A DNA stretch of 64,000 nucleotides from Bispira polyomma (lineage: Eukaryota). The translations under genes were made by a program, and so were the position numbers. The stretch spans positions 67,518,001-67,582,000 of the forward strand of contig OZ287751.1 of assembly GCA_965649765.1 (NCBI GenBank). The letters run 5' to 3'. Below the pieces are notes generated by a model. It was not told the origin of the DNA and did not search any database. It worked only from the letters and a program-made list of their open reading frames with translations. This document shows, piece by piece, positions 8,438 through 40,800 of this stretch (within the stretch, counting starts at the first letter, position 1; every line of letters begins with the position of its first letter).

Positions 8438-8881
8438 ATGGGAGCAGATGTAACCAAGGTTGGGGACTATTCGGTGGAGAAAGAAGATCGCCAGAAACCC
8501 TTAGGTAAAGGCACCTTTGGGGCCGTGTACAAGGGCAAGCATATCAAGAAGGGATTCCTCGTAGCCATAAAACAGTGCATTGTACACAGTGACGGGCACG
8601 GCTCTATGGCCATGAAAGAAATTAAGAACTTCCAGAAGATCCCCCACCACAAACACATTGTCCGTATGTATGATTACGACTACCTAGAAAAGTCCTTTTG
8701 GATCGTGATGGAATACTGCGACCGTGGAGATTTAGACGGATACATGAAGAAATACGTGCCCAATCTGGACAGGCAGCTGAAGATCATGTATCAGTGTGCA
8801 TGTGCCGTGAGCCATCTCCATAGCCAAGAGGAACCCATTGTCCACCGGGACATCAAGCCACAGAACATTCTGTTTAAAAAG
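8438..8881 (+). CDS. Copy A exon 1: kinase subdomains I-VIb
   Basis: Acceptor tttacag then ACCATGG; motifs GKGTFG, VAIK, KEI, MEYC, HRDIKPQN; donor AAG|gtcagt. Confidence 0.95.
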
Positions 8882-11800
8882 GTCAGTCTTTGTACCCATT
8901 TATTTAAATGTTACATTTATACATCTTCTATTTGTAAATAATGTATTTTGCATTTCAAAACATGCCTTTTTCATGAGAGACATCTTCTCAAGTGCAACAA
9001 TAGTATTCGGTATCCTTTTGAAAACCAGAATAACCATATAGATATATTAAAAATTAATATTATTTTTTTCCCATTTTGTCCAAAACATATTCGCTTCTTC
9101 TTCTCAACATTACATAGGAGGACGGTAAGGAAGTGGTGAAGATAGCCGACTTTGGTTTGACCCGAGCGATGGAGAAAGGCACCCATAAAGGAGCAGTGGG
9201 GATGAAGACACAGGCAGGAACAGTCGCTTTTATGGCCCCGGAGATACTTGCTGGAGCGACCTACGACCAAAGTGTAGACACATTTGCGATGGGACTTCTT
9301 TTCCTGGCAATGATCAATTTTAAAGCCACTGATGAATATATGTTTCCGCTTGCAGGTATAGTTGGGTATTTGGTACTGACTAAAACATCAGATTAATCTA
9401 ATATCTAACTGCTACTGTGGCCTAGGAGGTTGAACACAATTGTGTAGGAACACACATTATCCTGGGCTTGATCCCAGTCTGGGGCAACCAGGTACAGGCA
9501 GAAAGATAGAGGTTTAGATGATCACGTAATATAGCAGTCCTATGTCATTGGGTCCTGTCTCCAATAGCAAGCTAAAGAACCTTGGGGACACTGGTAAATG
9601 GTCACTCCAAAGGGTCTGTCATAAGTAAGGGAAATGACAGTTAATTGATGCTGGTTGGCTGTTGGCAGTCAATAAATGGGTTAATGAGCTCTTTGAATAC
9701 CAGATACAGGTAGATAAATGTGAGTATAAATTTGAATACAGATTAGTATCTATGATATATTAAGTACCTTCTATAAAAAAAAACCAGCTTCACTTTTAAT
9801 GGACTTTCTCATATTATACACCCAATCTTGTTATATGTGTACAAGTTATCTGTTTGACAAAGCTTCTCCACCTTAGTGTTTTTCTGGTTTGAACTGTGGT
9901 AATATGGTTTCTGATTTCGGTCGTGCAAATTAGAATCCACCAGTACAAAATTAAAATAGGCATTTGGTTGCTGATTGATTGATTAGTTTGTTTAAATGAT
10001 TAGTTTGTTTAAATGTAACAAAAATCACCATCTACAATATCTGCTACAGTAACGCATAACAGGCAAAGTCAAAATTTATGTCTTCAGCACAACTATCATT
10101 ACAATTGTCATGTTTATGATGTATCAGCTGTCTGCCTTTTCACATGTGTGCTTGTTGCAGTTGCAAACAGTTATTATGTATTATTGTATCAATTGTATAA
10201 AAGCTGTATTTTTTTTTTTTTTTTTTGGAATTGGGATATTTAACATCAACTTTAGTACCTGTTTAGGTTATATTGGGACGGGTGGTTGGAAACGCTGGAG
10301 CAAACAATGCATACAGTTGATTAAGGTTCTGCACTAAAACCAGCGGCCCACAGTAAGGAACTACCACCTTTCCCACATAGGCATTGACGGGAGTCCAAGC
10401 CACGCCAGCCAATCCCAGAGGTGAGAGACCAGTGTTGTAAAGCACAATGCTTGCTAACAACTAGGCCACCGCTGCCCCCTATAACTACTTTACAACCAGT
10501 GCTAGAATATGTGATATTGCACTAACTCAGTTAAGTTTTTGGAGTTTAACTTGTTTCATATTACTACGCTTGTTTCAAGCCTCAACAGCTAGTTCATTGG
10601 TGGAAGAAATATGATCGGTTAGCTTTGCTTGTTGTTTTCCATTGGTTCCTTTCTGGTGTATTTTTTCAGCCAGTTCCATGGAAAAAGAAGATTTATCCTG
10701 TGTTGGACAAGACATGCTGCAAGCAGCGCTTGGGAAGGAACCATCACCTACCATTGTGAAACTTATTGCAACAGACTCAGTGAAAATGAAGGGCATTAAG
10801 AAATTGATCAGAGACATCGTGAAATATGAACCCGATGAGAGAATAGGCATGACAGAAGTTGTTGAGAGACTGCGGAATATTGCAGATGGTTTGTAATAAA
10901 ATGGTTTTCATCAGTATTCTAATGTAACTAAAAATGTCTATAGCACTAAAATGAATGTCCAGGCATCCTCTAAAGCACATCATCCATAGAGTTAACCAAC
11001 AGCATAGTGTAGTATATAATGGGATACGTAAGGAAAGTGTGAAGACATTACAGATATAGTAAATGATTGTATTGGATTATATATATATTTAATGTGCTTT
11101 ATATTAATGCGAGTTTCAAAGCGCAACAGCCGAATCAATCATGTTTCCTACAACATAGACTAGTTTGGCATCAGTAGGCAATGGCATGTTCACATCTTGC
11201 CCAAACACAGACAAAAAATTTGGCAGAAAAAGTTTCATTCAAAGGTTTACAAAATAAGCTAAAAAGTAAATCTACTGAAAGTGATGAAGATATATATTGT
11301 AGAGCCCCTACTCTCTGAATTTGTGTTGCCTGAATATACCTTTTATACAAAGTTCATATCCAGTAACTATATTTGTAACTTCTTTTTTGTACTATTTTAA
11401 ATCTATAGAGTATTTTTGGTGTCTATTATTCGAATAAAAACCTTGTTCTCCCTACATCTTCGGACATGTTACAATAACAGCAATTCAGATGTAAGTAGTT
11501 TGACATAGCCTAGTGGTTCGGGAGTTGGTCTGAAAATCAAATTATCCCAGGTTTAACCACCAGTTGGCGACTTTGTTTGGTAATCCTAAGTTACACGGTT
11601 TGACTCCTAGTAACACCATAATGGTTTAATAGAATAATAGAGAGCTAATTTACATATTTTTTCAATCTATTAATTAACTAAAACTATTGACATATTTGCA
11701 TGAAGACCTATATGATTGGTTTGCATAGTGTAAGCTGAATGCTCGCGTATTCCAAGGTTTTGCAGATTAAATGTATGTATTTTGTATATATGTTATAAAC

Positions 11801-14800
11801 AAAAAAAAATTAAAAACAATATTAAAAAAACTAGCAATCAGTGACCGATGAATTGGTCATGTATTCGTTTGCTAACAGTAATTATGTCAGCTGACGTAGT
11901 CACAGACTTATTCCTGTCAGGCTGTCTACCTATAACTTTAAAAAAATCATCTGTCTGTCTGTTGACCTATCAACCTAAAAGTAAAATAAAAATATATTAT
12001 CTGTCGACCTGTCAACCTAATAAACCTAAAGGCTACAAAAAAAATATTCATCTATCTCCTCACAAGTTTACTTAAAAGTAAAATAAACAAAATATTTTCT
12101 GTCGACCTGTCAATCTATAAATTACAAAAAAATTAATCTCTCTATCTGTCGACCTGTCTACCTATAATTAACTTGCAAAAAAAATTAATAGTCAACCGGT
12201 CAACCTAAAAGTAAAATTTAATATTATTATTTGTTGACCTGTCAACCAATAAGTTACCCCCAAAAATTATCTGTTCTCCCTGTAACTTAAAAACTTTTTG
12301 TTGATTTCTTCTTGGGAAAAATGAGCCATTTTTATTGTAATAATATACAGATATCGGGACTTTTAAATATATATGCTAAATGTACGTTCCCTTGTTGTCG
12401 GCTATATGTAGTCAATAATAATTAAACGTCCCTTGAAAAGGGCGCTTATTTGGTTTCACCCCTGGTTTCCTCGCTGCCGCCGCCGCCGCCGCATGGTCTT
12501 CCTTGAATATCTCCTTCAATATTATCTGCATCAAAATTATTTTTGGCAGTTCTCTTAACCAGGAGTGGGAAATTTTTTTCATATTCTTGGCTTTGAACTT
12601 TGGCCTATGTCAGGTGACCCTGGGGGTGTAAAAGTGCTTGTCACTAGGTTTTCTCAGAAAGTATTCATCATAGCTCAATGAAATTTGGTATGTACCTTGG
12701 TAAGGCAATTTTCAGGACGGGAGACGCTGATGAGATTAATCGGATGATAATTGACCGATTGCCAACCGATTGATTTTTATTGAAATGCGAAAAATGGGTA
12801 CTTTTTTGCTATCTTGGAAACTATTGGGATTTCGGCTTTTTCTTGGTATAAGTTATTCATCTACTTTTTGATTTTATGTATGATGTAGAAATCTCACAGT
12901 TCTAAGTCCAGTACTCAATGAGTACTGAGTACTTTAAATGAGTAGTTTGCTCTATTTTGCTCTATCTTGCACTTTTATCAACTTTTCTTTTGAAGTACTT
13001 GTGATAGTTCAATGAAATTTAGCATGCACATTGCAAATACCAAAGCATAGATGTCCGTAAAGTTTTAGATCAATCTGGTGATAATTGATTGACAGGGTCG
13101 ATCAATCATACAAAATGGGGAAAAAATGTGTTGATGGGTGCTTTTTTGAGCGTGTGAGGATTTTTTTTATTTTTAATTTTAGACCAGTACATGCAGCGCG
13201 TAACCTTTAAAGAATAGCCTGAATTTTTATGTATTTTTTACCCCATCCAAAAATATGCGATCGTTACTGATATAAAACAATTTCAATTTCAAAAATTTTA
13301 AAAACTAAGGTTTTTTTTTTTAAACGTCCATTATCTCGAAAACGGTGTTAGATAGAGCGATTTCGAGCTCATTTTTGACCCACAAGGTTAATTTGGCTTA
13401 TATATGAACTTTCAAAAAATTTTCAATTTTGGCGGCCTTCTTGAATTTCTGTGACTTTTACGAAAATGTCTGTTATCTCGGAAATGGTGCTACATAGAGC
13501 GATTTTGAGCTTATTTTCGACCCACAGGTTTGATTTGCTTATATGTAAACTTTAAAAAAAATGTTCAATTTTGGCGGCCATCTTGAATTTCTGCGCCTTT
13601 TTTGAAAATGTCCTTTATCTCGGAAATGGTGCTAGATAGAGCGATTTTGAGCTTATTTTCGACCCACAGGTTTGATTTGCTTATATGTAAACTTTAAAAA
13701 AAATGTTCAATTTTGGCGGCCATCTTGAATTTCTGCGCCTTTTAGGAAAATGTCCTTTATCTCGGAAATGGTGCTAGATAGAGCGATTTCAAGCTAATTT
13801 TCGACCCACTGAGCTGATTTTTTCTTTTATGTAAACTTTCAAAAAATTTCACTTTTTGTGGCCATCTTAAATTTCTGCGTATTTTTCGAAAATGTCCGAT
13901 ATCTCGGAAACTGTGCTAGATAGAGCGATTTCAAGCTTATTTTCAACCCTCAAGGTTGTTTTCAATGTTCGATTTTGGCGGCCATCTTGAATTTCTGCGT
14001 CTTATTCGAAAATGTCCTTTATCTCGAAAACGGTGCTAGATAGAGCGAATGCAAGCTCATTTTCGACCCACAGGGCTGATTTACTTTATATGTAAACTTT
14101 TGAAGTAATTTTTGATTTGGGCAACCATCTTCAATTTCTGCGTCTTTTTAGAAAATGTCTGTTATCTCGAAAATGGTGCTACATAGAGCGATTTTGAGCT
14201 TATATTCAACCAAAAGTGCTGATTCTGCTTACATGTCAACTTTTAAACAATATCAAACCTTGTACACTAAACAATTTGATTATTATTTCAACTTTAGGGA
14301 CGCTTCATTTTGTTATTAAAAACTGTTTTCTAGTTTTGAACGATCTTGCCAAAGGCAAGGGCTAGAATGTAGGGAGACAGCAGACTTCCGGGAACATGCT
14401 GAGATTTCCATTTTCTGGTCATTTCGAATTATTTAGTAAACATGGTCTCTAGAACTTTATTGTTTCGTAGAACTTGCTAGGTAGGGCTTGGAGTGACTGT
14501 GAAAATGTGCAATGTAAACAATTCTCGCAAAGATTGTTTGTAACTGTATAATTTACTAAAATTAAAATATTGGGTGATACAAGTGGTACACATTTAATAT
14601 ATGGCAAAAGATTTTTAATTCCCTTTTCGCTTATATACAGCGTTTTTATAAATACGGACCATATTTGCATGTCAGCAAATAAGAGTCAAATTTTATAGGA
14701 AAAAATTTGTTTTTGAAAATATTATTCAAAATTGAAGAACAATATAGAAATAATGTGTGTACACATATTGTGACTACAAGTAAAATCCCTATATTTGAAA

Positions 14801-17800
14801 ACACAATACAAAATATTTTTACAGAAATGCAGTAGAGCTGAAATACCATTTTATTCCTGAAAGTTTTACTTTAAATTAACTTTAAACACTGTTTCTAAAT
14901 ATTTGTAGGAGTGACACCAACCTCATTTTTTATATTGAAATTACATTTAGTATTTGATAGTATAATACTAAAAGACTTAATTAACATACCTCAGATTAAA
15001 TTAACTCAAGTAGGATAATATTACTGGTCAACATACAACCCCAACATACAGCCACCACAGTAATAAATACCACCTCAGCATCCCAAACACTCCTAAACAC
15101 AGCACAGACACCATGGCCACCCCTCCCCTTCCCCCACCTGCCTTTCATTTACTGCAGCAAATCCCCCCCTAGCCTCACATACACACACAGCACACGTGTC
15201 TTTTTCCACACACAATTCTTTGTGTGTGAAAGAAGACAAGGCTAGAAAGTAAAATAAGTTCTTTCTATGTCAAAGGTTATATCAGTGAGGCCTAGATTTT
15301 TAAAATGGTTATTATAGTTTTTTTATAATGAAAACGAAGTGACTGCATTTTCCCCAGAATTAAAAAAGTGTACCTAGTAAGTATGAAGTTGAATTTTCGA
15401 GCCGATTTCATGAAAGTGCTGTTCCCACAAGAAATTTTACACACTTTATAATGAGAGAGCAAGCTAGTCTTGCTTGCTCTCTCATAAAAAGATAAAAAAA
15501 ACCCCAAAAAACCAACAACATGCAACAACACCATAATGGTTAGTAGGAATAACATCCTTGGGCAAGATGTGAACATACCATGGCCTGATGATAACAGCCA
15601 ATTGGTATCAGAATCACAATCAATGGTTTTTCGATTCTGATATTACAACATAAATTTGTGACTGCACTCTTTGCAAGTTTCATTTATTTTAATAATTACA
15701 TCAATAAAATTTTCGTCACTAGCTGTCACACTACATTAGTGGAGTATCGATTCTCATGTGGATCTAGAAGATACATGGCTTTAAGAAAGTGCTATAAAAC
15801 TCTACAATAGAACGTAAAAAAAGGTCCAATATTTAATGTCTTTTGACAGGATCTGCTGACCCTGGATCCATGGTATCTGGTACAACGGCCGCCAGAGCCA
15901 GGCTTAGTCTGTCCAATATGAGCCTAGCACAGACTAGAGGAGGTGATCTCATGTCTACTATGGGGGGTAGGGACCTCAAAACTGTGGTAGCCAAGAAACC
16001 AGAACTGGCGACAGTTCTGGATGAGGAGGACGAATCTGAAGAAGTGGAAGAGAAGGATGAGAATGATAAAGATGATGAATCAATGGAGGTAGATCTAGGT
16101 GAGTGAAATAACTGTTAATGAAAGTAGATCTAGGTGAGTGAAGTAACTTATAAAAGTTGTGGTATAGGCACCAAACATTGTCAAACAATATAACAGAGAT
16201 GTTGATGAATCAATGAAAGTAGATTTAGATGTCTAAAATAATCGATAAAGGGTGTGGTGTAGAAGTAATTAAAGGTGAGTGAAATAACCGATAAAAGGCT
16301 GTGGTACAAACAGTAAACATGGTCAGTTAGTAATATCAGCTGAGGTACAGTCAGTGGGACATCGGGAGGGAGGATGAACCCAATAGATTATACAAGTTAA
16401 GATAATAGGTATTCTGGTCCTCTTATATAATACAATACATGTACCACTTAAATTTTCTTTACAAGGACAAATACATTGAAAAAAAACTAATAAAGAGTGT
16501 TTTGTTTACATTTTCTTCTGGAATAATTAGGCTACCTCCTGATGAGGCGAATGTTAGAAGATGCTGTCCGTCACAAAAAGGAAGAACAAATTCCAGAGGC
16601 TGCAGCAAGGGCAAGGGCTGAAGACGAGGCGGCCATGTTACCTTTACTGGCTCTTATGAAGTTAATGCAGAGTGACTCAGAGACTGGCTCCAAGGTATTT
16701 GTGGGAGATTTGTCTTTCTTATCCTGCACTTTGTTTACATTTTCCAGAAAAACCTAAAAGCGAATAAATATACTGTATTTGATGTCTTTACTCCATTAAA
16801 CACACACTCACTTTATTTGGTTAGTTTTTCATTCTGAATCCAAAGGCTTATTTAACTGTGTACAATAAGTAAAATAAGTAATGTCAAATATGATATGTGC
16901 TATGTCTACAGTGCTTATACTTACATATTGCACTGGGTGTGAGTTATATGTTTTCTTGACTGTATATTTAGAGCCAGTGAGCCACTTATAACCGTCATTA
17001 CCCCTTAATTAAATGTTTCACAGAAGCTTAAATTTGAATTTAGTTGGGTTTTAATTAATTGTTTTCAACAGCTTAGGCAGTATCATGACAACCATACTTA
17101 TATGGTGGAGAAAACTGTGCTGCGGGCACTGTGTAAACCACATGGCGGCAAGTACCTGACAAACTTCCCCACATGAAGGAACAAAAACAGGACTTGAATC
17201 TGCATCAGTGAGAGTTTGGTGACTATTAGCAAGAGCTTCTAACCACCAGGCCACTGCAGTCCCTAAATGATGCTTGATGATTTAAAAAAAAAATGTTTGA
17301 AGCTCCTTGGGTCATGGGGTACAGTGCCCAATATCAGACTGCCACTACCCACTTAATGTATTCATCCAAGCCTCCATGTATCTGTCCCTATTGGGAATCA
17401 AACCCAAGCCCTCTATATTGAGTGAACGCTCAGATATTCTTTGAACAAGTCCTCTTTTGAGATATGGCGGGTAACTAGGTGCGACTCTAGATATAATTAA
17501 TTCAACAATAAATTAGTGTTGAATTGATACTAAACATATTTGAATTGAAAAGATCCAAACAAGAAGGCACAATTAAAACAATACTGAATGTTTTGCTTTA
17601 ATGTAGCTATGTTGAGAAAACAACAAAAATGTAGCAGTGTATAGAACTGTGCTATACATACATTTAAAATGGTATTTCAGTGGTTCACAGTTTGGAGTTT
17701 GCTATAGGGTTATTGATAAACCGGAAGAAAGAGCCGCAAAAGTAATATTACGAAATTTATTACTACCTGTAACACAAGTCCTCTTTATTCAAATATTCCA

Positions 17801-20800
17801 ATGTATCAAGTCCCTGTACACAAATAATTGTTTGATTTTTTTTAACTCCAACAATAAACAATAATATTTTGGTTATTGCTTGGTCTATATATATATGTTA
17901 CATGTAAACCTATTCCTATTGAGAGGAAATTTTAAAAAACATGTTTCGAAATTTTTTCTTGTCATTTACACAATATAAAATCCCACTTTAGATCAACCCC
18001 ACTTATAATGCATAAAATAATCTTAATTCACACAATGAAATTCCTACCTGAGATAGTCATAATATGCGAAATAATTATGTATTTAAACAATGCTTCATAG
18101 AATTTAAGTCAACCTGCTGCAAAATAAAAAAAAAAACTCTCCATAGCTACAGACAGAGGCTTATTGTGTAAAAATATTCAAAGACATACCATTTTTACTA
18201 TACTTCCTCGACATCTTATCACAGAAAACTATGACCAACACCAATACACAGATTAACTGAAATCTCATAATACTGATCAGTTCATCTGTGTAAAAATGAA
18301 CTAAAATTTCAGTCATCACCGGAAATTTTAGTCATTATGCATAATGACTGGTGATTCCAGGCATTACGTGAAATGATTGAAAGTTTTAGTCATTACGTGT
18401 AATGACTGGTTTCACAGATTGCCTGTCATATAAATAGCTCTAAAAGTGAATAAATATCAGTCCTATGGGAAAGAAGCCAATAAGTGAAAAGCAGTATATA
18501 AAACGTATTTGGAGTTTATTTTAAAACATTGATTTGTTACCCTTTTTGTTACAACATTAACAACATGTTAGCATTACTATACACCACTGTCTGTTAACAC
18601 AACTACTTTGACACATTACTTTTGTTAAGATTATTAACAGCTTTTGTTATGACATTAATATTAATCTACTTGTTAAAACTCTACTACTGACACCTATAAT
18701 ACAATATAGCTGGGAAGCGTTTAGCTCATTGAGCATTCTAGCTTACATCTTTTATAGTTACTAATCAGGCATGCCATTTACCTACGGTGTTAAGCTATCG
18801 TTAACCATAGTTGAGGAATGTCTGGGGATACTAAACTTAAGTATCGAAATTTTAAACAATTGTAAAGGGCTAAATTAAAAGAACTTTAATCATGGGTAAG
18901 TGGAGGGTGGGTTTTCCAATATGGCGCTCAGCCCTCTAAACTTCCAACTGACTTTGAACCCCAAGTGCGGAGGTATTTATGCACATTGATTTCAGCAAGC
19001 CCCCATGTGCTTTAACAACTCACAGCCTCAGTATCAGAAGGCCCAGTTGTATGCAAGAAATGGGTAGACAGCCACCATGTGATTTAATATCTCAAGCTTT
19101 GCAGACACCTTGTGGTCTAGTTATGTGCAGTACATACAGGCCAACCTAGGGGTGACCTTCCACTTTAACCATTGAAACCCAAAAACTAATATTGATATGA
19201 AAATAGCAAGGCCACTTGTGTTTAATTTTATGTTTTTTAAGCTTTCCCTAAGACTGACACAGTTTGCTACTTAAATTCCGCAACACCCGTTACATTTATT
19301 TTACCTTAAAGGTCTACATTGTCCTCATACATGTTTGTAAGGTCTTAGATGTGTACATATTAGTAGCAATTTGTAATGAAAATTGGCGGAGAACTTTGTT
19401 CTGTGTTTTATCAGAATGTCCATATTTGTTGCCAGATATGTCCACAGAGCAATTTCTCAAGTTTTGTGCAGTCATTGCCTACTGATAAGATTAAAGTTTA
19501 TATTGCCTACAAATAGCAGCATTCATTGTGGTATTCATATGTACAAAATATACCCACAATTAATTGGTAACCTGTCATAAATTTCTAGAACTTTGAGACA
19601 CATCAGGTACAACCATGTTATGGGTACTCTATAAAAAGGTTGGACATTATATAGAGAAGAACCTCTATTACTTGGACATCTTTGGGGAACAACAAGCATT
19701 TGTGTCTAGGTACTAATAAAAATTTTATACAACAGGAGAGTGTTATTTTAATATAAAACAATAGAAAAGCTAAATCATTTTAGGAGAAGTAAACCTGTGT
19801 TTATAAAATGGAGTAGTAGGAAAATTTTTGGAATAATAGTAGTTCTACTGTATAAACTGATAGAATTTTGAATTTTCATTGTCTTTAACCTCTTATTTTC
19901 TAGTTTGAAGTTGGTGACCGAGTGAAAGTGGACAAGGATCTTGCACGTGCTAAGGACCTCCAAACAGGCCATGGAGGGTGGGCCCCTGGCATGGAAAAGG
20001 TTCGGCATAGTATATAGTCTGTTGTATAGTTCTGTACCACAGAGGTAGGACTTTAGCACTGAGAAGAATTGATCTTTCTCTTGACTATTTAGTTTTGCAT
20101 TTTGAGCAATTTAAACTTATTTGCAGTAATTTCTAGTCATAAATTGAAAAACAACATTTTTCATTGGAATTCCCAAATCTCTTGAATAAGTTTATTTAAA
20201 GAAAAAAGTATTCTATCAATTTTTACAATATCATTCCTGTGATATATTGCAATGTTATCTGGGAATTTATTTCCAGAAGCACATTAAATGCCATTTAATA
20301 ATATTTTGCTGCAATAATGAAAAAATTCTTAACTAAAGAAATTAGGGGCCGTATTCAGAAAGTGGCTGAAACTAAATTTTGTTTCAAGTTTTGATCTTAA
20401 CTTTATGGCCGACTTTGAGAGGTCTAGGTTTACTAACCACTTTGATATAGTAGCTACAAACAAGTGCTCCTGTGTACACTTACTTATTCATTTTCCTTTT
20501 TTCAGTATTTGGATGAAGAAGGGCAAGTGAAGGAAATCAAAGGGAATATTGTCAATATCCGGTTTGCTAATGGACAGTCGTGAGTATAGTACGGAACATT
20601 CTCCAGAAATAAAAAAATACCTTTTTTGAAGAGCATGTAGAATAAACCAGAAGACTTGTTTAATACAAAACAGAAAAAGTAAATATAAATTTGTGACAGT
20701 GGTAAATGTGAATAAAATCAAATATATTTGCAATAAAAATAACTTGGTTGAGGTTCTTCTGTATTGATATATCCACCACAGTTTGGGTTCATAGACTGTC

Positions 20801-23800
20801 CATTAGGTTAAATGTCCATTAGGTTAAATGTCCATTAAATGTTAACACTTTTAACACAATAAACTGTATCTTATACAGTGTAAATATGAGTACACATATA
20901 TATATATCTGTATATAGAATTTGATTTTAGTTTTTGAATTTAAATTTAGTTTTAATACAGTGTGGAGTTTAGAATTTAGTTTAGTTTTTGATTTTATATC
21001 ATGGCAGCCAGATTTACTGGTGAAAGAAACCAGTGCTGAAGCACTGTAAACCACCGACCTACAGCAAGTACCTGATAAACTTTCCTACAAGAGGAAATGA
21101 ACAGGATTCAAACCCACATTGGTGAAAGGCCAGTGATTATAAAGCAGGTGCTTCTATCCACTGGGCCACCGTGCGCCAATATCTATATGCTATAGAACAG
21201 GAGTTTACATGTGCAGGACTTTTCATCAAATAGAAACTTATTTCACTGCAGTAAATTCTATATAACATCTGCAGAGTGAGCTTGTAAACCACAAAATGTT
21301 CAGACAATAGAGGTTCTACTGTACTTATATATATGTTGCTTTCTTACAGGCTTCGATACAATGCTATGTTACTCACAAAGTTGCGTCCATCTGGGAAATC
21401 TTCGCCAGGAAAACTTGTAAAGGGCAAGTTTAAGAGGTATGAATCTCTTTAGTCCATATGAGTGACATATAATATGTAACATATGTTGGTCACTGACAAC
21501 ATACTTTCAAAGATGCACAACATGTATTTGTATGCCTTGACAGCTAGTTTAACCTTGCAGAACCTAAGTAGAACTTCGTTGAGTCAAATACTCTTTTATA
21601 TTGCAAAAAGTATTGTAGTCCAATTATGGGTATCCCCTTTTGAATATTTCACACATTCGATTTGAAAAGTGTTTGTATTTTACCACCATCTGAGAATATT
21701 GGTTAACTTCCTGAAATATAATGTTATATATCCAAAACATAGTTTGCATTTTATTGTAGGTCAACATTAATTATCCAGGGTTTAAATATGAGACATAAAT
21801 CAAGGGATTAGAGTCCGAAACAAGTTCAACAAAATTGGATTTATGTTTTATGTTTTCGCTCTCTTATTGATGTTCGACAAATAAAGTGTGAGAGCATACA
21901 ATATATTTGGCAGCATTTGAATCAGAAATAAACCAATGGATGCAGTCTGCACTGAATAAATTAATTAAATAGTACTCTGAACAAAAAAATGAGACATGTT
22001 TCAGCAGATGAATCTTTATCCGCATACCATGAAACATTTACACGATACAAAATCATACCATAGCATTGTTGTACCTTAGAATTTGCTAATATACAGAGAT
22101 TAAATGCCAAAAAGACACTTAAGATTATATTATATTTGGTGTCTTTTTCTGTGTTTAAAGGTTGGATATTGTAAAGTTCAAGGCCACAGAATCGCAGGTC
22201 AGGAAGGCTCAAGAAGGTCACGGAGAATGGAACGACAGGATGACAAATGTAGGTGGAAGGGTTTTACTGAAGATATGTGTTAATTACATTAAATTAACCA
22301 CATTCTGTATTATGTAAAGAGATAAGTATACAGGTTATCTATTGGTAACACTTTATAAACAACATACAGTAAATACCTCTGAATAATGAACCCATCTGAA
22401 TATTGAACACCTCAGAATAGTGAACACCTCTGAATAGTGAACACCTCTGAATAGTTAACACCTCTGAATAATGAACATCTCTGAATAGGGAATACCTCAG
22501 AATAGTAAACACCTATGAACACCTCACAATAGTGAACACCTCTGAATAGTGAACACCTCTGAATAGTGAACATCTTATAATAGGGAACACCTCAGAATAG
22601 TGAACACCTCTGAAAAGTTAACACCTCTGAACAATTATTTTAGCCCTCACATAGTGTAGTCCTTCAAGGCATAAACACACTGTATCTATTGATAACATTT
22701 TAGTAATCGCATACTGTAATTTGTAAATGCAGATAACATTTTATTAACTTCATACTATAATTTATAAATATATATATACAATTGTAAAATGTTGATAACA
22801 TTTTATAAACCAGCTACTATAAATTGTAAATACATAATTGCAATTCTACACCAAAATATTACATGTATAGTATATATTTTATACAAGTATACAAGTATGC
22901 AGTATATCTATTGATAACATTTTATCAAGCACATACTGTAATTTGTAAATACAAAAGTGTTACAATACATGTAATGATAACATTTTATCCACTGCATACT
23001 GTAATTTGTGAAAACATAGGACATTTTATTAACCAAAAAACTGTAATTTGTAAATTCATAACTTTTCACAGTTATACTTATTTCTAAGCCTAATATATAA
23101 TTTCATAATTTTTAATCCAATAAATTTTATGATGCCTTTTACCCTGTCAAAAACATAAATGACCACTATTTGGGGGCTAACATAAATACCCACTGTCTTA
23201 TAGTAAGTTGAAGAAAACATTAGTGAAATTAATCGTCAATTCTAAACCATGGTCAGCAATTCTGAACGGTGGTTAGGAATTCTGAACAGGGGTTGGCAAT
23301 TCTGAACAGTGGTTGACAATTCAAAATAGTTTTTAATTATCAATCAAAGATGGTTTTTGGCACTGTAATGTACAATTATTTTGTCTAATGTTAACATTGG
23401 AGCCGGTCATTATTATATATGTCCATTTTCAGGGCAAAATATGGTATCTCACTGCACAAAAGGGGAAGTAATATTAAAAATTATTCATAATTTTCAAAAG
23501 TTTAGAATTATCGACATGTTTAATATTTATGCTGCTTTTTGAGCATGCACAAATATAAATATAGTTTCTGGAGAGTGAGATTTAGTGTATATAGAATAAA
23601 GTATGCTGTTGTGCAAGTTTGGATAATACAGCTGACTCCTTATTTCTGGAATAATCTCCCATTCCACATCAGGGCAGCAAAGAGCCTTTCCTCTTTTAGA
23701 AAAGTAATCTTTTCTAACCTAGCCCTGGTTTTTCTTGGCTGAATTCTAATTTTGTTGACAACATTGGTTATGGTGAATTTACAATGTAAATCTGTTATTA

Positions 23801-26800
23801 TTATAGTGCCTTAATCTGAGGGGAGTTGTACACAGAGTGTTTGATGACGGGGATGTGTATGTGGAATTCCTGAATGGAGACAAGTAAGTCAATTTAGAAA
23901 TAACGTTTTGTTTGGACAAGGAAAAAGTATAATGAGTTCATTTATGAGACTGGAAAGACAATGCAAACTAGAAAAATTTCCATTCATGCAAAACATATGC
24001 AAATCCCAAGTGGGCAGGCTAAAGAACCTTGGGATCTGAGTGGCAACTTTTAATACAAAAAAGGGAAATACAAGTCCAGAGTAATCCAGCCTGTTATATT
24101 CTATTTGAAATAAAAGAGAAAGTATACTGGTACATTAAATACATAAAAGTTAACATTTGGTTTATAGACTCATGTTTGCTGTTGTTCCAGAAGGAGGGGG
24201 CGGGGCTCCCTGGCCTGTCCCCTTTGGCCCAACCTAAGAACATTGTGTGGATGCTATTAGTATTACAGTATTGTTTGTATAAACAGGTGGTGTGTGAACC
24301 CTGATGGTCTCCAGCTAGTGGACACGTCTGCCATAGAGATAGAGGCAGGAGACCTAGTGCTAGTGTTAGACGACAAGGAGAAAGTGAAGGCTTTACAGAA
24401 AGGGCATGGGGAGTGGGTGGAAGACATGGCACAGGTAAGATAATAGATAGGTAAAAGATAGAAGACAGGTAAGCGATTGTACAGGTAGGAGAGTGTACAG
24501 ATAAGAGATTGTACAGGTAAGAGATAGTCCAGGTAAGAGATTGTACAGGTCAGAGATGAATGAAATGGTACAGGTATGAGATGGAAGACATGGTACAGAT
24601 AATAGATGGTATAGGTAGTAGATGATACAGGTAAGAGATTGTACAGGTAAGAGATTGTACAGGTAGAAGATTGTACAGGTAAGAGATGTTACAGGTAAGA
24701 GATGGTACAGGTAAAAGATTGTACAGGTAAGAGATGGTACCGTTAAGAGATGGTACAGTTAAGAGATGGGAAACGTGATACAGGTAGGAGATCTAATTTA
24801 ATCTAATCTAGTCGTACTTTTATAGTGCTTAATCTTTGTACAACAAATTCTAAGGTGCAACAAACCCAAAACGTTAATTGAAAATCAATAATAGTGGGCG
24901 GATGGAAGTCGTAACCAGGGAGACTACCGTAAATGGTTGCGACGGCTAAGGTGGAAAAGCCTGTTCAAAAAGATAGGTCTTCAGCTTACTCCTGAAAGAG
25001 GAGAAAGTTTGAGCCAGGCGAACATGATCAGGTAGGCTGTTCCAAATGAGGGGGCCATCATGAGCTAGGCAGTGATTGAACTGAATTTTGGATTTGTGGA
25101 TGCGAGGGTCGAAAGTGGGAATGTTAAGGTATAATTTATCAGGGTTACTGCGCCTTGTCCTGACTGAGCATGTATATTTGGATAGATGGGGGCTAAAATA
25201 AGTGGGTAATCCAGAATTTAGAAATTTATAAATTATTGTTGATGTTTCAAAAGCAACACGATATTTTATTGGGAGCCAGTGCAGTGACTTGAGTACAGGA
25301 GTAATGTGGGAATATTTAGAAGTTTTGGTCACAATACGTGCCAATGAGTGTTGGATATTCTGAAGGCGTCTGAGATCACTACGAGATAAGGAACGGAACA
25401 AAGAGTTACAGTAATCAAGCCTACTGCTGACCAAAGCATTGGCAACAGTGATTGCAGTGGATTTGGAAAGATAGCGTCGAATCCGCCTGAAATCACGGAG
25501 GCCAACAAAACATGATCTACACACCGATGCGACATGGTTAGAGAAGGAGAATTCAGAGTCAAACACCACACCCAGGTTTCGTACTTTGTCAGCTGGAAAA
25601 AACCTGCTGCCAAGAATGTCAAGTGGAAAACAGCTGGACAATTTTTCCCGTTGCGACTTGGAGCCAAACAAAATAAACTCAGTCTTCTCAGGGTTCAGCT
25701 TGAGTTTATTTGCTGCCATCCAGTGGTGTACATCAACAAGGCAGTTCTGTAAGGAAGTGAAAGCTGCCTGGGCAGAGTCAAGTGTAAGGTGGATGTACAG
25801 TTGGGTATTATCAGCATAGAAGTGAAAGTTTATGTTTTTGTATGCAGCAATAATCTTGCTGAGTGGAGTGGTGTACATGGAAAACAAAATGGGACCCAGG
25901 ACGGAACCTTGGGGAACAACAAATTTTAACCATGTTGAGTCGGATAAGATATTGCCAATTTTGACTGATTGGAATCTATCAGACAAATATGCCATGAACC
26001 ACTTAAGCGCCATACCGCTGATACCGAACCAAGACGATAGGCACTCAAGAAGAACTTGTGATCAATAGTATCAAAGGCTGCTGACAGATCCAGCAGTACT
26101 AAGGCAGTAGGCATACTTTTGGATAAAGATGTATGAACATCATTTTTGATGCAGAGAAGTGCAGTCTCAGTAGAATGACCACTTTTGTACACTGACTGAT
26201 ACCTATTGGACAGATTGCTGACGTCAACATGTTGTTTGATCTGTAAGGCAACCGCGCGTTCTACCAACTTAGAGATATAGCAAAGGCCTGAGACAGGACG
26301 GTAATTTTTCAAGTCAGCCGTTGGAAGAGAAGGTTTTTTTATTAAAGGAGTGACAATAGCCTTTTTAAAATCATTTGAAGACGGTTGGTGGAGCTGTTGG
26401 TAAAGGGGCATTTGGGGCAGCTAATTTAAAACCGTCACGGATTAAAGATGGTACAGGTAAGAGATAGTACAGATTAGAGATGGAAGACATGGTACAGGTA
26501 AGAGATGGTACAGGTAAGAGATTGTATAAGTAGGAGATTTTACAGGTAACAGATTGTACAGGTAACAGATTGTACAGGTAGAAGATTGTACAGTTAAGAG
26601 TTTGTACAGGTAGAAGATTATACAGGTAAGAGATGGTACAGGTAAGAGATGGTACAGGTAGAAGATTGTACAGGTAAGACATGGTACAGGTAGGAGATGG
26701 TACAGGTACAACATGGTCCAGGTAAGAGATGGTACAGGTAAGCGATTGTACAGGTAGGAGATTGTACAGGTAAGATATTGTACAGGTAAGAGACAGTCCA

Positions 26801-28544
26801 GGTAAGAGATTGTACAGGTTAGAGATGGATGACATGGTACAGGTATGAGATGGAAGACATGATACATATAATAGATGGTACAGGTAGTAGATGATACAGG
26901 TAAGAGATGGTACAGGTAAGAGATTGTATAGGTAAGAGGTGGTACAGGTAAGAGATTATACAGGTAAGAGATGTTACAAGTAAGAGATGGTACCGGTAAG
27001 AGATTGTACAGGTAAGAGGTGCATGACATGGTACAGGTAAGAGATGGGATACATTATACAGGTAGGAGATGGAAGAGGTACAGGTAAGATGTGCTACAGG
27101 TACGACATGGTCCAGGTAAAAGATGGTACAAGTAAGAGATAGTACAGATTAGAGATGGATGACATGGTACAGGTAATAGATGGCACAGGTAATAGATGGT
27201 ACAGGTAGTAAATGGTACAGGTAAGAGATGGTCCAGGTAAGAGATGGTACAAGTAAGAGATTGTACAAGTAGGAGATTTTACAGGTAACAGATTGTACAG
27301 GTATGAGATTGTACAGGTAAGAGATAATACAGGTAAGAGATTGTACAGGTAAGAGATGGTACAGGTAGAAGATTGTACAGGTAAGACATGGTACAGGTAA
27401 TAGATGGTACAGATAAGACATGGTACAGGTAAGAGATGGTACAAGTAAGATATTGTACAGGTAAGAGATGATAAAGGTAGAAGATTGTACAGGTAAGAGA
27501 TGGTACAGGTACAGGTAAGATATTGTACAGGTAAGAGATGGATGACATGGTACAGGTAAGGGATGGGATACATGATACAGGTATGAGATGGAAGACATGG
27601 TCCAGGTAAGATATAGTACAGGTACAACATGGTCCAGGTAAGAGATGGTACGGGTTAGAGATAGATAACATGGTAAGAGAAAGATATGGGAGACATGATG
27701 TAGGTAGGAGATGGAAGAGATGGTACAGGTAAGAGATGGTACAGGTAAGAGATGAAATACTGTATAATGCAGTATGATTAGTGGAATATTAAGTTGTGAG
27801 TTGTTGTCAAATATCTGTATTTATTAATCTTGTATATATAAATTTATTCTATGTTTTGGGTTATTCCTTTTTTTTCAATAATTTGGAAATTATCAAATTT
27901 ACTTACATGTACAAATTCTTAAAAAATTATCATTGTACTTAGTATTGGACTAAGTTTAAAACTAAAATAAAATAATAATAGAAATAGTTTCCAATTCGTC
28001 AATGTGGTTCTATATTGCAGTGTCTTGGTGTGTCCGGAATTGTTAGAAAAGTGGGCATTAATGACGTGGCTGTGGTCGAGATATCAAGCACCAAGTGGAC
28101 GTGGAACACCAAAGCCTTGAGACCGGTGGCAAAAGGAGGTGAGTAGTGGTCCTTGTACAGGTTAGAACCTCGAGATCATCCAAACTGCTAGTCTTCCAAT
28201 ATTTATTCATATGATAAACATTATTCCTACTCTTCCAATACAGTCAAACTTGTCTCAAAATGTAGTCGGTCTTTATAAACCGGTAGTCTTTATATACGAG
28301 TAAAACATATAGCAAACAATAGTAAAGGGTATTTTAAAGCAAGGACTTTTGCAGGCCGGTGATTGCTTAATACATGTGGTATTTCCTACTGATTTGGCTG
28401 TGTGTCCCATTTGCTATTCTTTTTGACTAATTATTATATTCCATTCAGTCATCAAAGGGTTTAACAATCTGACGGATTGCTGATTGTAATTTTGTTACAG
28501 AGGAAATGGTGATGATCATGCTGAGGAAACAATTATTGGCATAG
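8438..28544 (+). CDS. Copy A gene model: Ser/Thr kinase + acidic linker + 3x Mind bomb REP (SH3_15) repeats, 681 aa, 13 coding exons
   Basis: join(8438..8881,9118..9355,10670..10888,15850..16098,16531..16694,19904..19999,20506..20579,21350..21436,22161..22248,23807..23883,24287..24434,28021..28138,28501..28544) = 2046 nt, open frame. All introns GT-AG, phases 0,1,1,1,0,0,2,2,0,2,0,1. The same exon set is conserved in copy B. The exon 3-4 join is inferred from phase compatibility. Confidence 0.8.
9118..9355 (+). CDS. Copy A exon 2: kinase subdomains VII-IX
   Basis: catag|EDGKEVVKIADFG...GTVAFMAPE...VDTFAMG; donor GCAG|gtatag. Confidence 0.93.
9412..9620 (+). mobile_element. Degenerate tRNA-derived SINE (paralog at ~38375-38455)
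   Basis: gtggcctaggaggtt A box and gggcttgatccc B-like box. Confidence 0.45.
10225..10479 (-). mobile_element. SINE, same family as 2226-2476
   Basis: Near full-length match (ccagcggcccacagtaaggaactacc...aggccaccgctgcccc). Confidence 0.85.
10670..10888 (+). CDS. Copy A exon 3: kinase subdomains X-XI (extends to stop at 10896 if the donor is not used)
   Basis: ttttttcag|; KKLIRDIVKYEPDERI with the conserved subdomain XI Arg; candidate donor GATG|gtttgt conserved in copy B. Confidence 0.88.
11500..11630 (+). mobile_element. tRNA-derived SINE head (paralog at ~40550-40680)
   Basis: catagcctagtggt A box, ccaggtt B-like box. Confidence 0.45.
11915..12290. repeat. Degenerate ~45-50-bp tandem repeat (tctgtcgacctgtcaaccta)
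   Basis: Direct reading. Confidence 0.75.
12424..14337 (+). mobile_element. HINE/DINE-1 (Helentron)-like non-autonomous element with an internal 142-bp tandem array
   Basis: Subterminal IR aaacgtccct (12424) / agggacgctt (14296), 3' ctagtttt end, (gcc)n microsatellite near the 5' end, seven ~142-bp units at ~13320-14250; absent from copy B intron 3. Confidence 0.6.
15850..16098 (+). CDS. Copy A exon 4: linker with acidic tract
   Basis: ttttgacag|GA TCT GCT ... DDESMEVDLG|gtgagt; conserved in copy B. Confidence 0.85.
16099..16335 (+). repeat. Short repeats derived from the exon 4 3' end and donor (copy A)
   Basis: gtagatctaggtgagtg-like motif recurs at ~16124, ~16219 and ~16265. Confidence 0.8.
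16531..16694 (+). CDS. Copy A exon 5: helical linker
   Basis: attag|(G)YLLMRRMLEDAVR...SETGSK|gtattt; conserved in copy B. Confidence 0.85.
17085..17265 (-). mobile_element. Degenerate SINE
   Basis: ggtggagaaaac...aacaggacttgaa...taaccaccaggccac, related to the other minus-strand SINEs. Confidence 0.55.
19904..19999 (+). CDS. Copy A exon 6: MIB REP repeat 1, N-half
   Basis: ttctag|FEVGDRVKVDKDLARAKDLQTGHGGWAPGMEK|gttcgg. Confidence 0.92.
20506..20579 (+). CDS. Copy A exon 7: REP1 C-half
   Basis: tttcag|YLDEEGQVKEIKGNIVNIRFANGQS|gtgagt. Confidence 0.88.
21000..21178 (-). mobile_element. Degenerate SINE
   Basis: caagtacctgataaactttcc...caggattcaaaccc...ccactgggccaccg. Confidence 0.55.
21350..21436 (+). 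CDS. Copy A exon 8: end of REP1, linker, start of REP2
   Basis: ttacag|LRYNAMLLTKLRPSGKSSPGKLVKGKFKR|gtatga. Confidence 0.87.
22161..22248 (+). CDS. Copy A exon 9: REP2 N-half
   Basis: ttaaag|LDIVKFKATESQVRKAQEGHGEWNDRMTN|gtaggt. Confidence 0.9.
22365..22635. repeat. 17-bp minisatellite GAACACCTCTGAATAGT (paralog 54640-54820)
   Basis: Direct reading. Confidence 0.9.
23625..23740 (+). mobile_element. L2/CR1 ORF2 3' fragment
   Basis: PYFWNNLPFHIRAAKSLSSFRK motif. Confidence 0.55.
23807..23883 (+). CDS. Copy A exon 10: REP2 C-half
   Basis: ttatag|CLNLRGVVHRVFDDGDVYVEFLNGDK|gtaagt. Confidence 0.9.
24287..24434 (+). CDS. Copy A exon 11: end of REP2, REP3 N-half
   Basis: aaacag|WCVNPDGLQLV...AGDLVLVLDDKEKVKALQKGHGEWVEDMAQ|gtaaga. 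Confidence 0.92.
24435..27760 (+). repeat. ~16-bp satellite GTACAGGTAAGAGATG/T in intron 11, split by a LINE
   Basis: Arrays at 24435-24790 and 26445-27760; the unit equals the exon 11 donor context. Confidence 0.95.
24795..26444 (-). mobile_element. 5'-truncated L2/CR1-clade LINE (RT, frameshifted)
   Basis: NYRPVS, STETALL, LLDLSAAFDTIDH, VPQGSVLGP, FYADN, SRLDYCN, WNSLP; (TTAGA)n-like 3' tail; absent in copy B. Confidence 0.93.
28021..28138 (+). CDS. Copy A exon 12: REP3 C-half
   Basis: ttgcag|CLGVSGIVRKVGINDVAVVEISSTKWTWNTKALRPVAKG|gtgagt. Confidence 0.9.
28501..28544 (+). CDS. Copy A exon 13: terminal coding exon EEMVMIMLRKQLLA*
   Basis: ttgttacag|, phase 1, TAG stop at the same position as in copy B. 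Confidence 0.75.
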
Positions 28545-37406: not shown

Positions 37407-37850
37407 ATGGGAGCCGAGGTGACTAAGGTTGGGGACTATTCTGTGGAAAAAGAAGATCGCCAGAAACCCTTAGGCAGTGGGAGCTTTGGGGCTGTGTACA
37501 AGGGCAAGCATATCAAGAAGGGCTTCCTCGTAGCCATAAAACAGTGCATTGTACATAGCGATGAGCATGGCTCTATGGCCATGAAAGAAATCAAGAACTT
37601 TCAGAAAATCCCCCACCACAAACATATTGTCCGTATGTATGATTACGACTACCTGGAAAAGTCCTTCTGGATCGTGATGGAATACTGCGACCGTGGAGAT
37701 TTAGACAGATACATGAAGAAATACGTGCCCAATCTGGACAGGCAGCTGAAGATCATGTATCAGTGTGCGTGTGCCGTGAGCCATCTCCATAGCCAAGAGG
37801 AACCCATTGTCCACCGGGACATCAAGCCACAGAACATTCTGTTTAAAAAG
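37407..37850 (+). CDS. Copy B exon 1: kinase I-VIb
   Basis: ACCATGG; GSGSFG, VAIK, HRDIKPQN; AAG|gtcagt. Confidence 0.95.
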
Positions 37851-40800
37851 GTCAGTCTTTGTACCCATTTATTTAGATGTTATATTTACACATCTTCTAT
37901 TTTTAAATATTGTATTTTGCATTTTAACATGCCTTATCGATGAGAGGCATCTTCTAAAGCACAGCAACAGTAGTTAAGCCAGGATCTTTCTGATCACGAG
38001 AACAACTACACATATATTAAAACATAATACTATTTTCTCTATTTTTGTCAAAAACCTAGTTGCTTCTTCTTCTTAACATTATACAGGAGGACGGTAAGGA
38101 AGTGGTGAAAATTGCCGACTTTGGTTTGACCCGAGCGATGGAGAAAGGCACCAAAGGAGGGATGAATACACAGTCAGGAACACTCGCCTTTATGGCCCCC
38201 GAGATCTTCGCTGGAATGACCTACGACGAAAGTGTAGACACCTTTGCGATGGGACTTCTTTTCTTGGCAATGATCAATTTCAAGGCCACCGATGAAATTA
38301 TGTTCCCACTTGCAGGTATAGTTGGCTATTTGGTGCTGGCTGAAGCATCAAATTAATCTTATATTTATCTGCCATCATGGCCTAGTGGGTAAGACTCTAG
38401 GAACACAGAATACCTGGGTTTGATTACACCTTTGAGCGACCAGATACTGGCAGATACATAAAAACAGAAAAGCAATATTTACTAAAAATAGGACGTTTCA
38501 ATGTGTTATTTGACAAATTCAGTAGATTTAAAGTTTGGTTAAAGTTTGACGAAGACCAACACAAAACTGCCAGTCACCTGTACACCCTCCGAGACCTACT
38601 TGACAGGCAAGAATCAGTAAACAAAAGAAAAATTCCTCAACACTCCTCAATATGGCTGCCAAATGCCTCGAGCGTAAACTGGAATGCACTTGGCATCAAG
38701 ACATGTCCAGCATAACCCATAGCAGGTACCGCACCGCAGTAAATCACTATAATCATATGCTTAAACATTCCAAACATAGCCATTACACTAACCTTGTTAA
38801 TGAAAACTGCGATAACCCAAGGACCTTGTGGAACTCAATCAAAAAATTACTTCACAAATCCTCTATGGTTATACTACTTGACTGCAAATCAGTGATTGCT
38901 TTGGCATTGATAGCACCAGCCTTGGTTGGATCCAGTCCTTTTTAGAACGCAAACAAAAATTTCAATTGGTGATCAATTCTCGGAAGTTTTCTCACTCCAC
39001 CATGGTGTCCCACAAGGTTCTGTATTGGGCACTTTCCACTTCACTATATACAACATTGCCCTCATCAAATTCGTCTCTCAGTTTAATCTTACTCATCACC
39101 TGTATGCTGACGACAAACTTTGACTCAAGCATATCAGACTTGGCAAAATGCCTTGAGGCTGTGCAAAACTGGATGGGAAGTGTCAAGCTTAAACTCAACC
39201 CAGACTAAACTGAATTTATTACAATAGGCGACAAGGCTACCTGAGACGTTTGAAACAATTTTTCAGTCTCCTTGAAAATGACATGTCACCAGGAAGGCAA
39301 GCAAAGAACCTTGGTGTTAACTTATACAGTAGTGATGTTGCCAGTGTCTGTCAGGCCTGCTATTATCATTTATACAATCTGCACAGAATATGGTCACAGG
39401 TATGTCAGTCCTGAAACTGCGGTATAGGTGGCAAATGCCACGGTGAACAGTTGGTCGACTGGACTCTTTCAATTTCATGCTGTACGGTATTTGTAAGGTG
39501 AATATCACAATACTTCAAAGAATCTAAAATGCCTCTGCTGTATTGTGTACATGCTTGACAAATTCAGCCATGTCTCACCATACCTAAACAAACTCCACTG
39601 GCTACCTGTCGAACAGCGTATTTTTTTTAAATACAACCATCTTTTGTTCAAAGCTATAAAGCTGAACCAATCTCCATATTTGTCCTCATTCATCAACTCC
39701 TCAAGTAACTTTGGTAATCAGAGTGTTTTTCTTTCAAGTGGGCAATTTGGTTATTGTTTTTTTTTCAGCCAGTTCCATGGAAAAAGTAGAGTTATCCTCT
39801 GTTGGACAGGACATGCTGCAAGCAGCGCTTGGGAAGGAACCATCACCTACCATTGTGAAAATTATCGCAACTGACTCCGTAAAAATGAAGGCAATCAAGA
39901 AATTGATCAAAGACATTGTAAAATACGAACCCAAAGAGAGAATCAATATGACAGAAGTTGCTGAGAGATTGCGGAAAATTGCAGATGGTTTGTAGTAAAA
40001 TGGCTTACATCAGTAATTGTCATATATAATCTAATGTAATCAAAAATTTCTATCACCAAAATTTATGTCCAGGCATCCTCAAAAGAATATTATCCGTATT
40101 AACCAACAGCCTAGTCAGGTAAATAATGAGATTTGGAAGGAAAGTGTGGATACAGTGGATGTATGGTGACTGATTGTATTGTGTTATATAGTTTTAACAT
40201 GCATTATTAATGTGAGGCATGTTATAAAGCGCAACAGCCAAGTGAATCAACCAATGATGTGTGCCCAGATTGTCATCAGTGGGCAATGGCATGTTTCATT
40301 TAAAGTTTTATTAAATGTGAACAAACTAAGCTAAAACAGATATTTTGTGTAGAACCCCTGCTTTCTGAACTTGTGTTGCCTGAATATACATTTTCGCAAA
40401 TCTCATTTTCACTCTTCCATATTCGTAACTTCCTTTTTGCACTTTTTTATATCTATAGGGTATTTTATGAACTTTTTATTATTTAAGTGCAACTTTGCTC
40501 TCCCTACATCTTATGACATATTCCAAAAAAATTATTTAGATGTAAGTGGTTGGACATAGCCTAGTTGTTCGGAAGTTGGTCTGGCAATCAGAATGTCCCA
40601 GGTTCAGCACCCGGTTGGCGACTTGGTTTAGTGATATGAAGTTCAGCCCAGTTTGACTCCTGGTAACGTCATAATGGTTACTGCGGTGTAACATACTTTG
40701 GCAAGAAATGAATATGCCATTTTCTACTGATAATGACCAATTGGTATTATGATCACAATCAGTGGTTTATCAATCCTGATGTTGCATTTTGGAATGTGGT

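What the first reader, a model, noticed from the sequence alone, without database searches (positions are those of the whole stretch)
8438..28544. Hidden chimeric gene: Ser/Thr kinase fused to three Mind bomb REP (SH3_15) substrate-binding repeats, with no E3 ligase modules
SEEN: thirteen GT-AG exons splice into one 681-aa frame. The kinase has intact catalytic motifs (GxGxFG, VAIK, HRDIKPQN, DFG, APE). An acidic/helical linker follows, then three repeats: FEVGDRVKV..LQTGHGGWAPGM..G.V..I..YNAMLLTK, LDIVKF..QEGHGEWNDRM..GVVHRVFDDGDVYVEF..WCVNP and AGDLVLVLDD..VKALQKGHGEWVEDM..LG.SG.V..WTWN. Most REP exons are missing from the ORF track. KNOWN: these match the paired REP repeats of the Mind bomb E3 ligases MIB1/MIB2, which help bind Notch-ligand tails. 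In MIB they sit with Mib-Herc2/ZZ, ankyrin and RING domains, none of which is found here. Plant KEG combines a kinase with related repeats but also has RING and ankyrins. INFERENCE: a lineage-specific kinase has captured Mind bomb's recognition module and may phosphorylate, or compete for, MIB-type substrates instead of ubiquitylating them. I know of no described animal protein with this architecture.
Basis: partly seen in the sequence, partly recalled or inferred. Interest (0 to 1): 0.92.

Follow-up and report, generated by a model that had tools for sequence, protein, structure and literature searches.

The report
Ancient kinase with Mind bomb repeats
This is a real, apparently undescribed animal gene that joins a protein kinase to three binding repeats taken from the Mind bomb ubiquitin ligase; it also occurs, in several copies, in a sea anemone, a lamp shell and marine worms, so it is old rather than peculiar to this species.

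Summary
Observation confirmed. Thirteen GT-AG exons (8438-28544) give an open 681-aa frame: Pkinase, linker, three SH3_15 repeats. A second intact copy lies at 37407-59233 (dN/dS 0.18), and the genome holds three more. No RNA run exists, so the exon 3-4 join is not shown directly. However, a phase-1 donor at the kinase end is kept in all five copies and in every homologous locus inspected. 'Lineage-specific' is wrong. The same architecture and most intron positions occur in Lingula anatina (five RefSeq models, one misnamed ATG1), Actinia tenebrosa, an annelid assembly (Owenia, from memory) and unnamed assemblies, usually as tandem copies. The repeat exons have the intron phases of this genome's own MIB1, and the gene stops where MIB1's ankyrin repeats begin. 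So the module came from a MIB1-type gene and gained a third repeat. It is not a Mind bomb ligase. The likely role is a kinase docked by REP repeats; Notch-ligand substrates are unsupported, since the main ligand-binding MZM module is missing. Plants have a look-alike kinase plus SH3_15 architecture. I found no paper on the animal family. Earlier scan notes cover this same window only.

The parts
8438..8881 (+). Copy A exon 1 (first coding exon; an acceptor AG lies 3 nt before the ATG, so a 5' UTR exon probably lies upstream): kinase N-lobe to catalytic loop
8882..9117 (+). Intron 1, 236 nt; absent in the 88%-identical ortholog L043 and in paralogs P1-P3, so probably gained recently
9118..9355 (+). 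Exon 2: DFG, activation loop, APE, alphaF
10670..10888 (+). Exon 3: end of kinase C-lobe; phase-1 donor GTTTGT conserved across homologues; in-frame TAA and an AATAAA (10895) just downstream in copy A
15850..16098 (+). Exon 4: low-complexity, acidic linker
16531..16694 (+). Exon 5: helical linker starting GY.LL/LM, recognisable in P1, P3, Lingula, Actinia and L027
19904..20579 (+). Exons 6-7: REP repeat 1 (completed by the start of exon 8, 21350-21436)
21350..23883 (+). Exons 8-10: end of repeat 1, spacer, REP repeat 2
24287..28138 (+). Exons 11-12: end of repeat 2 and REP repeat 3; the intron between them holds a satellite with 42 copies of CAGGTAAG and a LINE-like fragment
28501..28544 (+). 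Exon 13: terminal helix and stop, placed like the MIB1 helix between REP2 and ankyrin repeat 1
37407..59233 (+). Copy B: tandem duplicate with the same 13 exons, 675 aa

Best explanation
One gene of an old animal family, present before or near the cnidarian-bilaterian split. A Ser/Thr kinase became joined to the REP exons of a MIB1-type gene, cut just before the first ankyrin repeat, with one repeat duplicated to give three. The protein is most likely an active kinase. Its three SH3-like REP repeats would bind short motifs in unstructured tails of partner proteins, or set its location, and so bring the kinase to its substrates, which it phosphorylates instead of ubiquitylating. Shown: gene structure, selection, spread across phyla, REP fold, MIB1-like intron pattern (single-gene status about 0.93). 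Inferred: catalytic activity (from motifs), REP as docking module (by analogy with MIB1, MIB2 and KEG). Unknown: the substrates.
For: Open frame and purifying selection in two copies. Three more copies in this genome in the same exon order. Phase-1 donor after the last kinase helix in all five copies and in Lingula, Actinia, GCA_903813345.2 (both copies), L026, L027, L043, often as canonical GTAAGA, GTGAGT, GTAGGT or GTATGT. In L043 GTTTGT is kept but the stop after it is not. Lingula XP_013416219.1 is a 676-aa Pkinase + 3x SH3_15 model sharing eight intron positions and the same terminal helix. Host MIB1 shows the same REP intron phases (0, 2, 0, then 1 before the helix), MIB2 does not. AlphaFold of the Lingula repeats (pLDDT 80) matches MIB1 REP best (Foldseek E about 1e-12); by sequence 4TSE E 2e-24. 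REP binds the JAG1/Delta C-box (PMC11887331) and is needed for MIB2-FAT1 binding (PMC10082778).
Against: No transcript spans any junction: only DNA runs exist, and the Lingula and Actinia entries are predicted models. Kinase activity and REP binding are untested. The exon-1 kinase tree is weak and does not show the fused kinases as one well-supported clade; Actinia groups with Lingula (97) rather than Lingula with this host. The full-length AlphaFold model failed (pLDDT 36), so nothing is known about kinase-REP contacts.
Confidence: 0.6

Rival explanations
1. Same gene, with a role in innate immune or cell-death signalling: a fast-duplicating kinase family whose C-terminal module is a swappable sensor or adaptor. 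Compatible with the docking mechanism; it names the pathway.
For: Tandem copies in every genome with enough DNA to tell (host 5, Lingula 5, Actinia 2, GCA_903813345.2 2, L048 at least 2). In Actinia a neighbouring paralog splices the same kinase to an AIG1/septin-like GTPase beside a DED-domain gene. MIB2 acts in TNF/RIPK1 signalling (PMC5912950).
Against: Copies A and B are under purifying selection, with no sign of diversifying selection. MIB2 binds RIPK1 through MZM, not REP. The module looks MIB1-derived. No expression data.
Confidence: 0.3
2. One reading: the protein binds Delta/Serrate tails through REP and phosphorylates them or competes with Mind bomb, modulating Notch signalling.
For: REP binds the ligand C-box; Drosophila Mib1 lacking MZM is dominant-negative in a REP-dependent way (PMC11887331). 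Three repeats could raise avidity.
Against: MZM carries most ligand binding and Mib1 without REP rescues almost fully. The fusion lacks MZM. Best exon matches to MIB repeats are only about 45-55% identical, and binding residues could not be checked (PMC4355479 not held). Variable copy number and patchy spread fit a core Notch regulator poorly (inference).
Confidence: 0.15
3. Two neighbouring genes, or mainly a kinase-only product: exon 3 reads through to the stop at 10894-10896 and is polyadenylated at AATAAA 10895, while the repeats start from the ATG in exon 4.
For: Weak donor GTTTGT, stop two codons later in both copies, AATAAA in copy A, ATG in a good context in exon 4. Some databases annotate kinase and repeats apart.
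Against: Donor position and phase are conserved across phyla while the sequence and stop after it are not. Copy B has no AATAAA there. The split Actinia model is explained by N gaps, and its twin is annotated as one 653-aa gene. A minor kinase-only isoform remains possible (about 0.25).
Confidence: 0.07
4. The patchy spread comes from horizontal transfer between marine animals rather than ancient inheritance with losses.
For: Actinia and Lingula proteins are 51-53% identical and group together (97), closer than Lingula to this protostome.
Against: Introns in the kinase N-lobe differ between Actinia and Lingula while the REP introns are shared. Old paralogy or faster evolution in the host explains the tree equally. 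The protein searches missed known members, so the gaps may be artefacts.
Confidence: 0.1

Closest known systems
Mind bomb E3 ligases MIB1/MIB2 (REP domain, Pfam SH3_15, PDB 4TSE/4XI6)
   Same: Homologous SH3-like repeats with the same fold; intron phases and the helix after the repeats match host MIB1.
   Different: Three repeats instead of two; no MZM, ankyrin or RING; an N-terminal kinase instead. The host keeps full MIB1 and MIB2 elsewhere (C3).
Lingula anatina XP_013416219.1 ('ATG1'), XP_013389779.1, LOC106156501, LOC106181717 and a 'STE20-like' model; Actinia tenebrosa 653-aa model and LOC116304135
   Same: Same architecture, length (about 650-680 aa), linker helix, terminal helix and most intron positions: the same family.
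   Different: Automatic annotations only, with misleading names; no paper found. About 40-49% identity in the kinase.
Plant KEG and the plant kinase + SH3_15 cluster (ESM Atlas, 85 Streptophyta members, 630 aa; probably KOC1/At4g32250-like, from memory)
   Same: Kinase combined with SH3_15/HERC2-like repeats that mediate protein interactions (PMC3697954).
   Different: KEG also has RING and ankyrin repeats; KOC1 is a chloroplast outer-membrane kinase. The animal repeats trace to MIB1, so the likeness is probably convergent (not tested by tree).
ULK1/ATG1 and PDIK1L/PBK-like kinases
   Same: Nearest kinase domains: ULK1 in PDB (E 4e-30); PDIK1L-like and PBK clusters in the Atlas.
   Different: Only generic kinase-level similarity; no ATG1 C-terminal domain found by Pfam; orthology not shown.

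Membership tests
Mind bomb E3 ligases | MZM region (two Mib-Herc2 domains and a ZZ finger) | tested here: not met
   PF06701 matches only on C1, C2, C3, none at the five fusion loci on C4; MIB2 queries hit the window only in REP exons
Mind bomb E3 ligases | REP (SH3_15) repeats | tested here: met
   three repeats
Mind bomb E3 ligases | Ankyrin repeats and C-terminal RING fingers | tested here: not met
   stop in exon 13, conserved in B, P1 and Lingula; no match in window
Mind bomb E3 ligases | Binding of Notch-ligand tails | not testable with these tools
   needs binding assay; structure paper not held
Active eukaryotic Ser/Thr protein kinases | Gly loop, VAIK Lys, alphaC Glu, HRDxKxxN, DFG, APE | tested here: met
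Active eukaryotic Ser/Thr protein kinases | Measured phosphotransfer | not testable with these tools
   needs enzyme assay
ULK1/ATG1 kinases | ATG1 C-terminal domain after the kinase | tested here: not met
   Pfam on P0024 finds only kinase and SH3_15 families
KEG | RING + kinase + ankyrin + HERC2-like repeats | tested here: not met
   no RING or ankyrin; KEG layout from PMC3697954
Plant kinase + SH3_15 proteins (KOC1-like) | Kinase and SH3_15 in one chain | tested here: met
   Atlas row 29
Plant kinase + SH3_15 proteins (KOC1-like) | Common descent of kinase and repeats; membrane anchor | not tested
   no plant sequence was fetched; the animal C-terminus is a short charged helix
Lingula/Actinia kinase-REP3 family (unnamed) | Kinase, GY.LL linker helix, three REP repeats, terminal EEM helix, shared intron positions | tested here: met

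The most novel reading that the evidence does not exclude
An unrecognised kinase family as old as the eumetazoans, lost from the usual model animals, reads the same tail motifs as Mind bomb and puts phosphate instead of ubiquitin on them, giving a parallel control of Notch ligands or other MIB clients in cnidarians and spiralians.
Probability: 0.15. Interest if true: 0.85.

Novelty: new variant of a known kind. Interest (0 to 1): 0.6.

Why it matters
It adds an apparently unnamed kinase family to the animal kinome, hidden under wrong names or split gene models, and shows exon by exon how a ubiquitin-ligase recognition module was reused by a kinase. It offers a natural REP-only protein for asking what REP repeats bind without MZM, a point left open by the Drosophila work, in lab-accessible animals such as Lingula and Owenia.

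Tried and rejected
The joined 681-aa model was not searched, aligned or folded; all searches went exon by exon by reference, with the Lingula protein P0024 as full-length stand-in. RNA evidence: no RNA run holds the stretch; the contigs laid were genomic, showed both copies and no exon-exon joints. Atlas feature search of the repeat half gave only noise. Word-based protein searches had low recall: they missed P0160 twice and the Actinia 653-aa model, so absence elsewhere is not shown. Papers: no match to an animal kinase + SH3_15 protein in the listed titles and abstracts; the KOC1 and MIB1 structure papers are not held. Rejected: broken Mind bomb gene (full MIB1 and MIB2 exist on C3); A and B as alleles (dS 0.22, different insertions); a fourth repeat in paralog P3 (an intronic echo of the exon end); intron 1 as a mobile introner (only a 65-nt part is repeated elsewhere). 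A related stand-alone kinase without nearby repeats lies in GCA_000328365.1 (Capitella, from memory).

Full report
Check of the observation. All twelve introns are GT-AG, the phases fit, and the frame is open for 681 codons. Pfam, run exon by exon, gives Pkinase on exons 1-2 and SH3_15 on exons 6, 9, 10 and 11. A tandem copy at 37407-59233 keeps every exon and phase, with 618 of 668 residues identical, dS 0.22 and dN 0.039.

The weak point is the join between exons 3 and 4. The donor is GTTTGT, read-through gives a stop two codons later in both copies, copy A has AATAAA there, and exon 4 has an ATG in good context. No RNA run is available, so I tested the join by comparison. The genome (1.04 Gb; mitochondrial code 5 and giant-haemoglobin linker genes suggest a protostome, probably an annelid) has three more copies: one just upstream of the window and two at C4:16.94-17.00 Mb, about 50% identical in exon 1, each with the kinase exons followed by the three repeats in order. 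All have a phase-1 GT donor within one codon of the same place, as GTATGT, GTAAGA and GTAAAA. So do Lingula, Actinia, both copies in GCA_903813345.2 and three unnamed loci. In the 88%-identical ortholog L043 the hexamer GTTTGT is kept but the stop after it is not. A donor kept across phyla, with random sequence after it, marks an internal exon. I put one gene at about 0.93; a minor kinase-only isoform in copy A is still possible.

Spread. An unfiltered search with exon 1 returned Lingula anatina XP_013416219.1, 676 aa, Pkinase plus three SH3_15, named 'ATG1'. Lingula has five such models. Its gene shares eight intron positions with the window gene and ends in the same helix. Actinia tenebrosa has two tandem copies, one annotated whole (653 aa) and one split by assembly gaps, plus an inverted paralog in which the same kinase is spliced to an AIG1/septin-like GTPase. 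GCA_903813345.2 (Owenia fusiformis by my memory of the accession; the tool gave no name) has two tandem copies under fragmented annotation. Whole or partial loci occur in ENA assemblies ERZ22147071, ERZ27279858, ERZ25878582 and ERZ25069863. The family is therefore not lineage-specific. Its true range is unknown because the word-based searches missed known members. That human, fly and worm kinomes lack this architecture is my own knowledge, not tested here. The exon-1 tree is weak: the fused kinases fall in one group of 30 rows (support 83) apart from the host's other kinases, and Actinia joins Lingula (97), which fits old paralogy, rate differences or transfer.

Origin of the repeats. The host has complete MIB1 (C3:1.32 Mb) and MIB2 (C3:19.39 Mb) genes. 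In MIB1 the REP exons run: phase 0 in mid-repeat, phase 2 before the Trp, phase 0 in mid-repeat, no intron before the last Trp, phase 1, then the helix ERLSALLKKLF that precedes ankyrin repeat 1. The fusion has this layout with one extra unit and stops at the end of that helix. MIB2 lacks the phase-2 intron. The simplest reading is capture of the REP exons of a MIB1-type gene followed by one internal duplication (inference). The Lingula repeats fold with pLDDT 80 and match MIB1 REP best by structure and by sequence; overall TM-scores are low (0.28 by query, 0.46 by target), probably because the repeats are placed differently.

How it probably works. All catalytic motifs are intact and under purifying selection, so an active kinase is likely (inference). 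REP repeats are binding modules: MIB1 REP binds the JAG1/Delta C-box (PMC11887331), MIB2 needs REP to bind FAT1 (PMC10082778), and the related KEG repeats mediate protein interactions (PMC3697954). I therefore favour a kinase brought to partners by three REP repeats on a long acidic linker (0.6). Which partners is open. The Notch reading is weak (0.15) because MZM carries most ligand binding and is absent, although Mib1 without MZM is dominant-negative through REP. Tandem expansion in each genome and the swapped GTPase module beside a DED gene in Actinia hint at immune or cell-death signalling (0.3), without direct evidence.

Comparison and verdict. It borrows part of Mind bomb's recognition module but is not a Mind bomb ligase: MZM, ankyrin and RING were tested and not found. 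It is not ATG1/ULK1 beyond general kinase likeness. A kinase plus SH3_15 cluster exists in plants, probably KOC1-like from memory and probably convergent. My paper searches found no description of the animal family. Real, apparently undescribed, old and multi-copy; a new variant of a known kind; interest 0.6.

Noticed in passing
window 24435-28020 and 57335-58495: Intron 11 holds a 16-bp satellite that repeats the exon 11 end and donor (42 and 18 copies of CAGGTAAG). Similar echoes of exon ends follow exon 4 (97-bp unit at 41209-41820) and occur in paralog P3.
   Followed up: partly
window 8882-9117 and 37851-38086: Intron 1 is absent from the close ortholog L043 and paralogs P1-P3, so probably gained recently at AAG|GAG; a 65-nt part is repeated across the genome, the whole intron is not.
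   Followed up: partly
exons 6-12 versus exons 1-3, copies A and B: Synonymous divergence is three times lower in the REP exons (dS 0.095) than in the kinase exons (0.31), p 1.6e-4; gene conversion or splicing constraint on short exons.
   Followed up: partly
L042:10001-17401: Actinia paralog XP_031562348.1 splices the same kinase, through the same phase-1 donor, to an AIG1/septin-like GTPase; a DED-domain gene lies upstream.
   Followed up: partly
G000:C4:79.90-79.91 Mb (L032, L033): Partial, near-identical duplicate of the host MIB2 gene (REP and first ankyrin exons) with no Mib-Herc2 match nearby.
   Followed up: partly
window 24946-26411 (-): LINE-like reverse-transcriptase fragment (judged from the ORF translation) inserted in the intron 11 satellite of copy A only.
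   Followed up: no
window 46628-49535 (-): Gypsy-like gag/integrase fragments (judged from the ORF translations) with a 625-bp internal tandem duplication in intron 5 of copy B.
   Followed up: no
window 3639-6458 and 35555-36532: 15-bp minisatellite upstream of both copies, duplicated with the gene.
   Followed up: no
L005-L010 (C8, C9, C10), also C5, C12: At least nine further related kinases with long first coding exons and no SH3_15 match on those chromosomes; they group apart from the fused kinases.
   Followed up: partly
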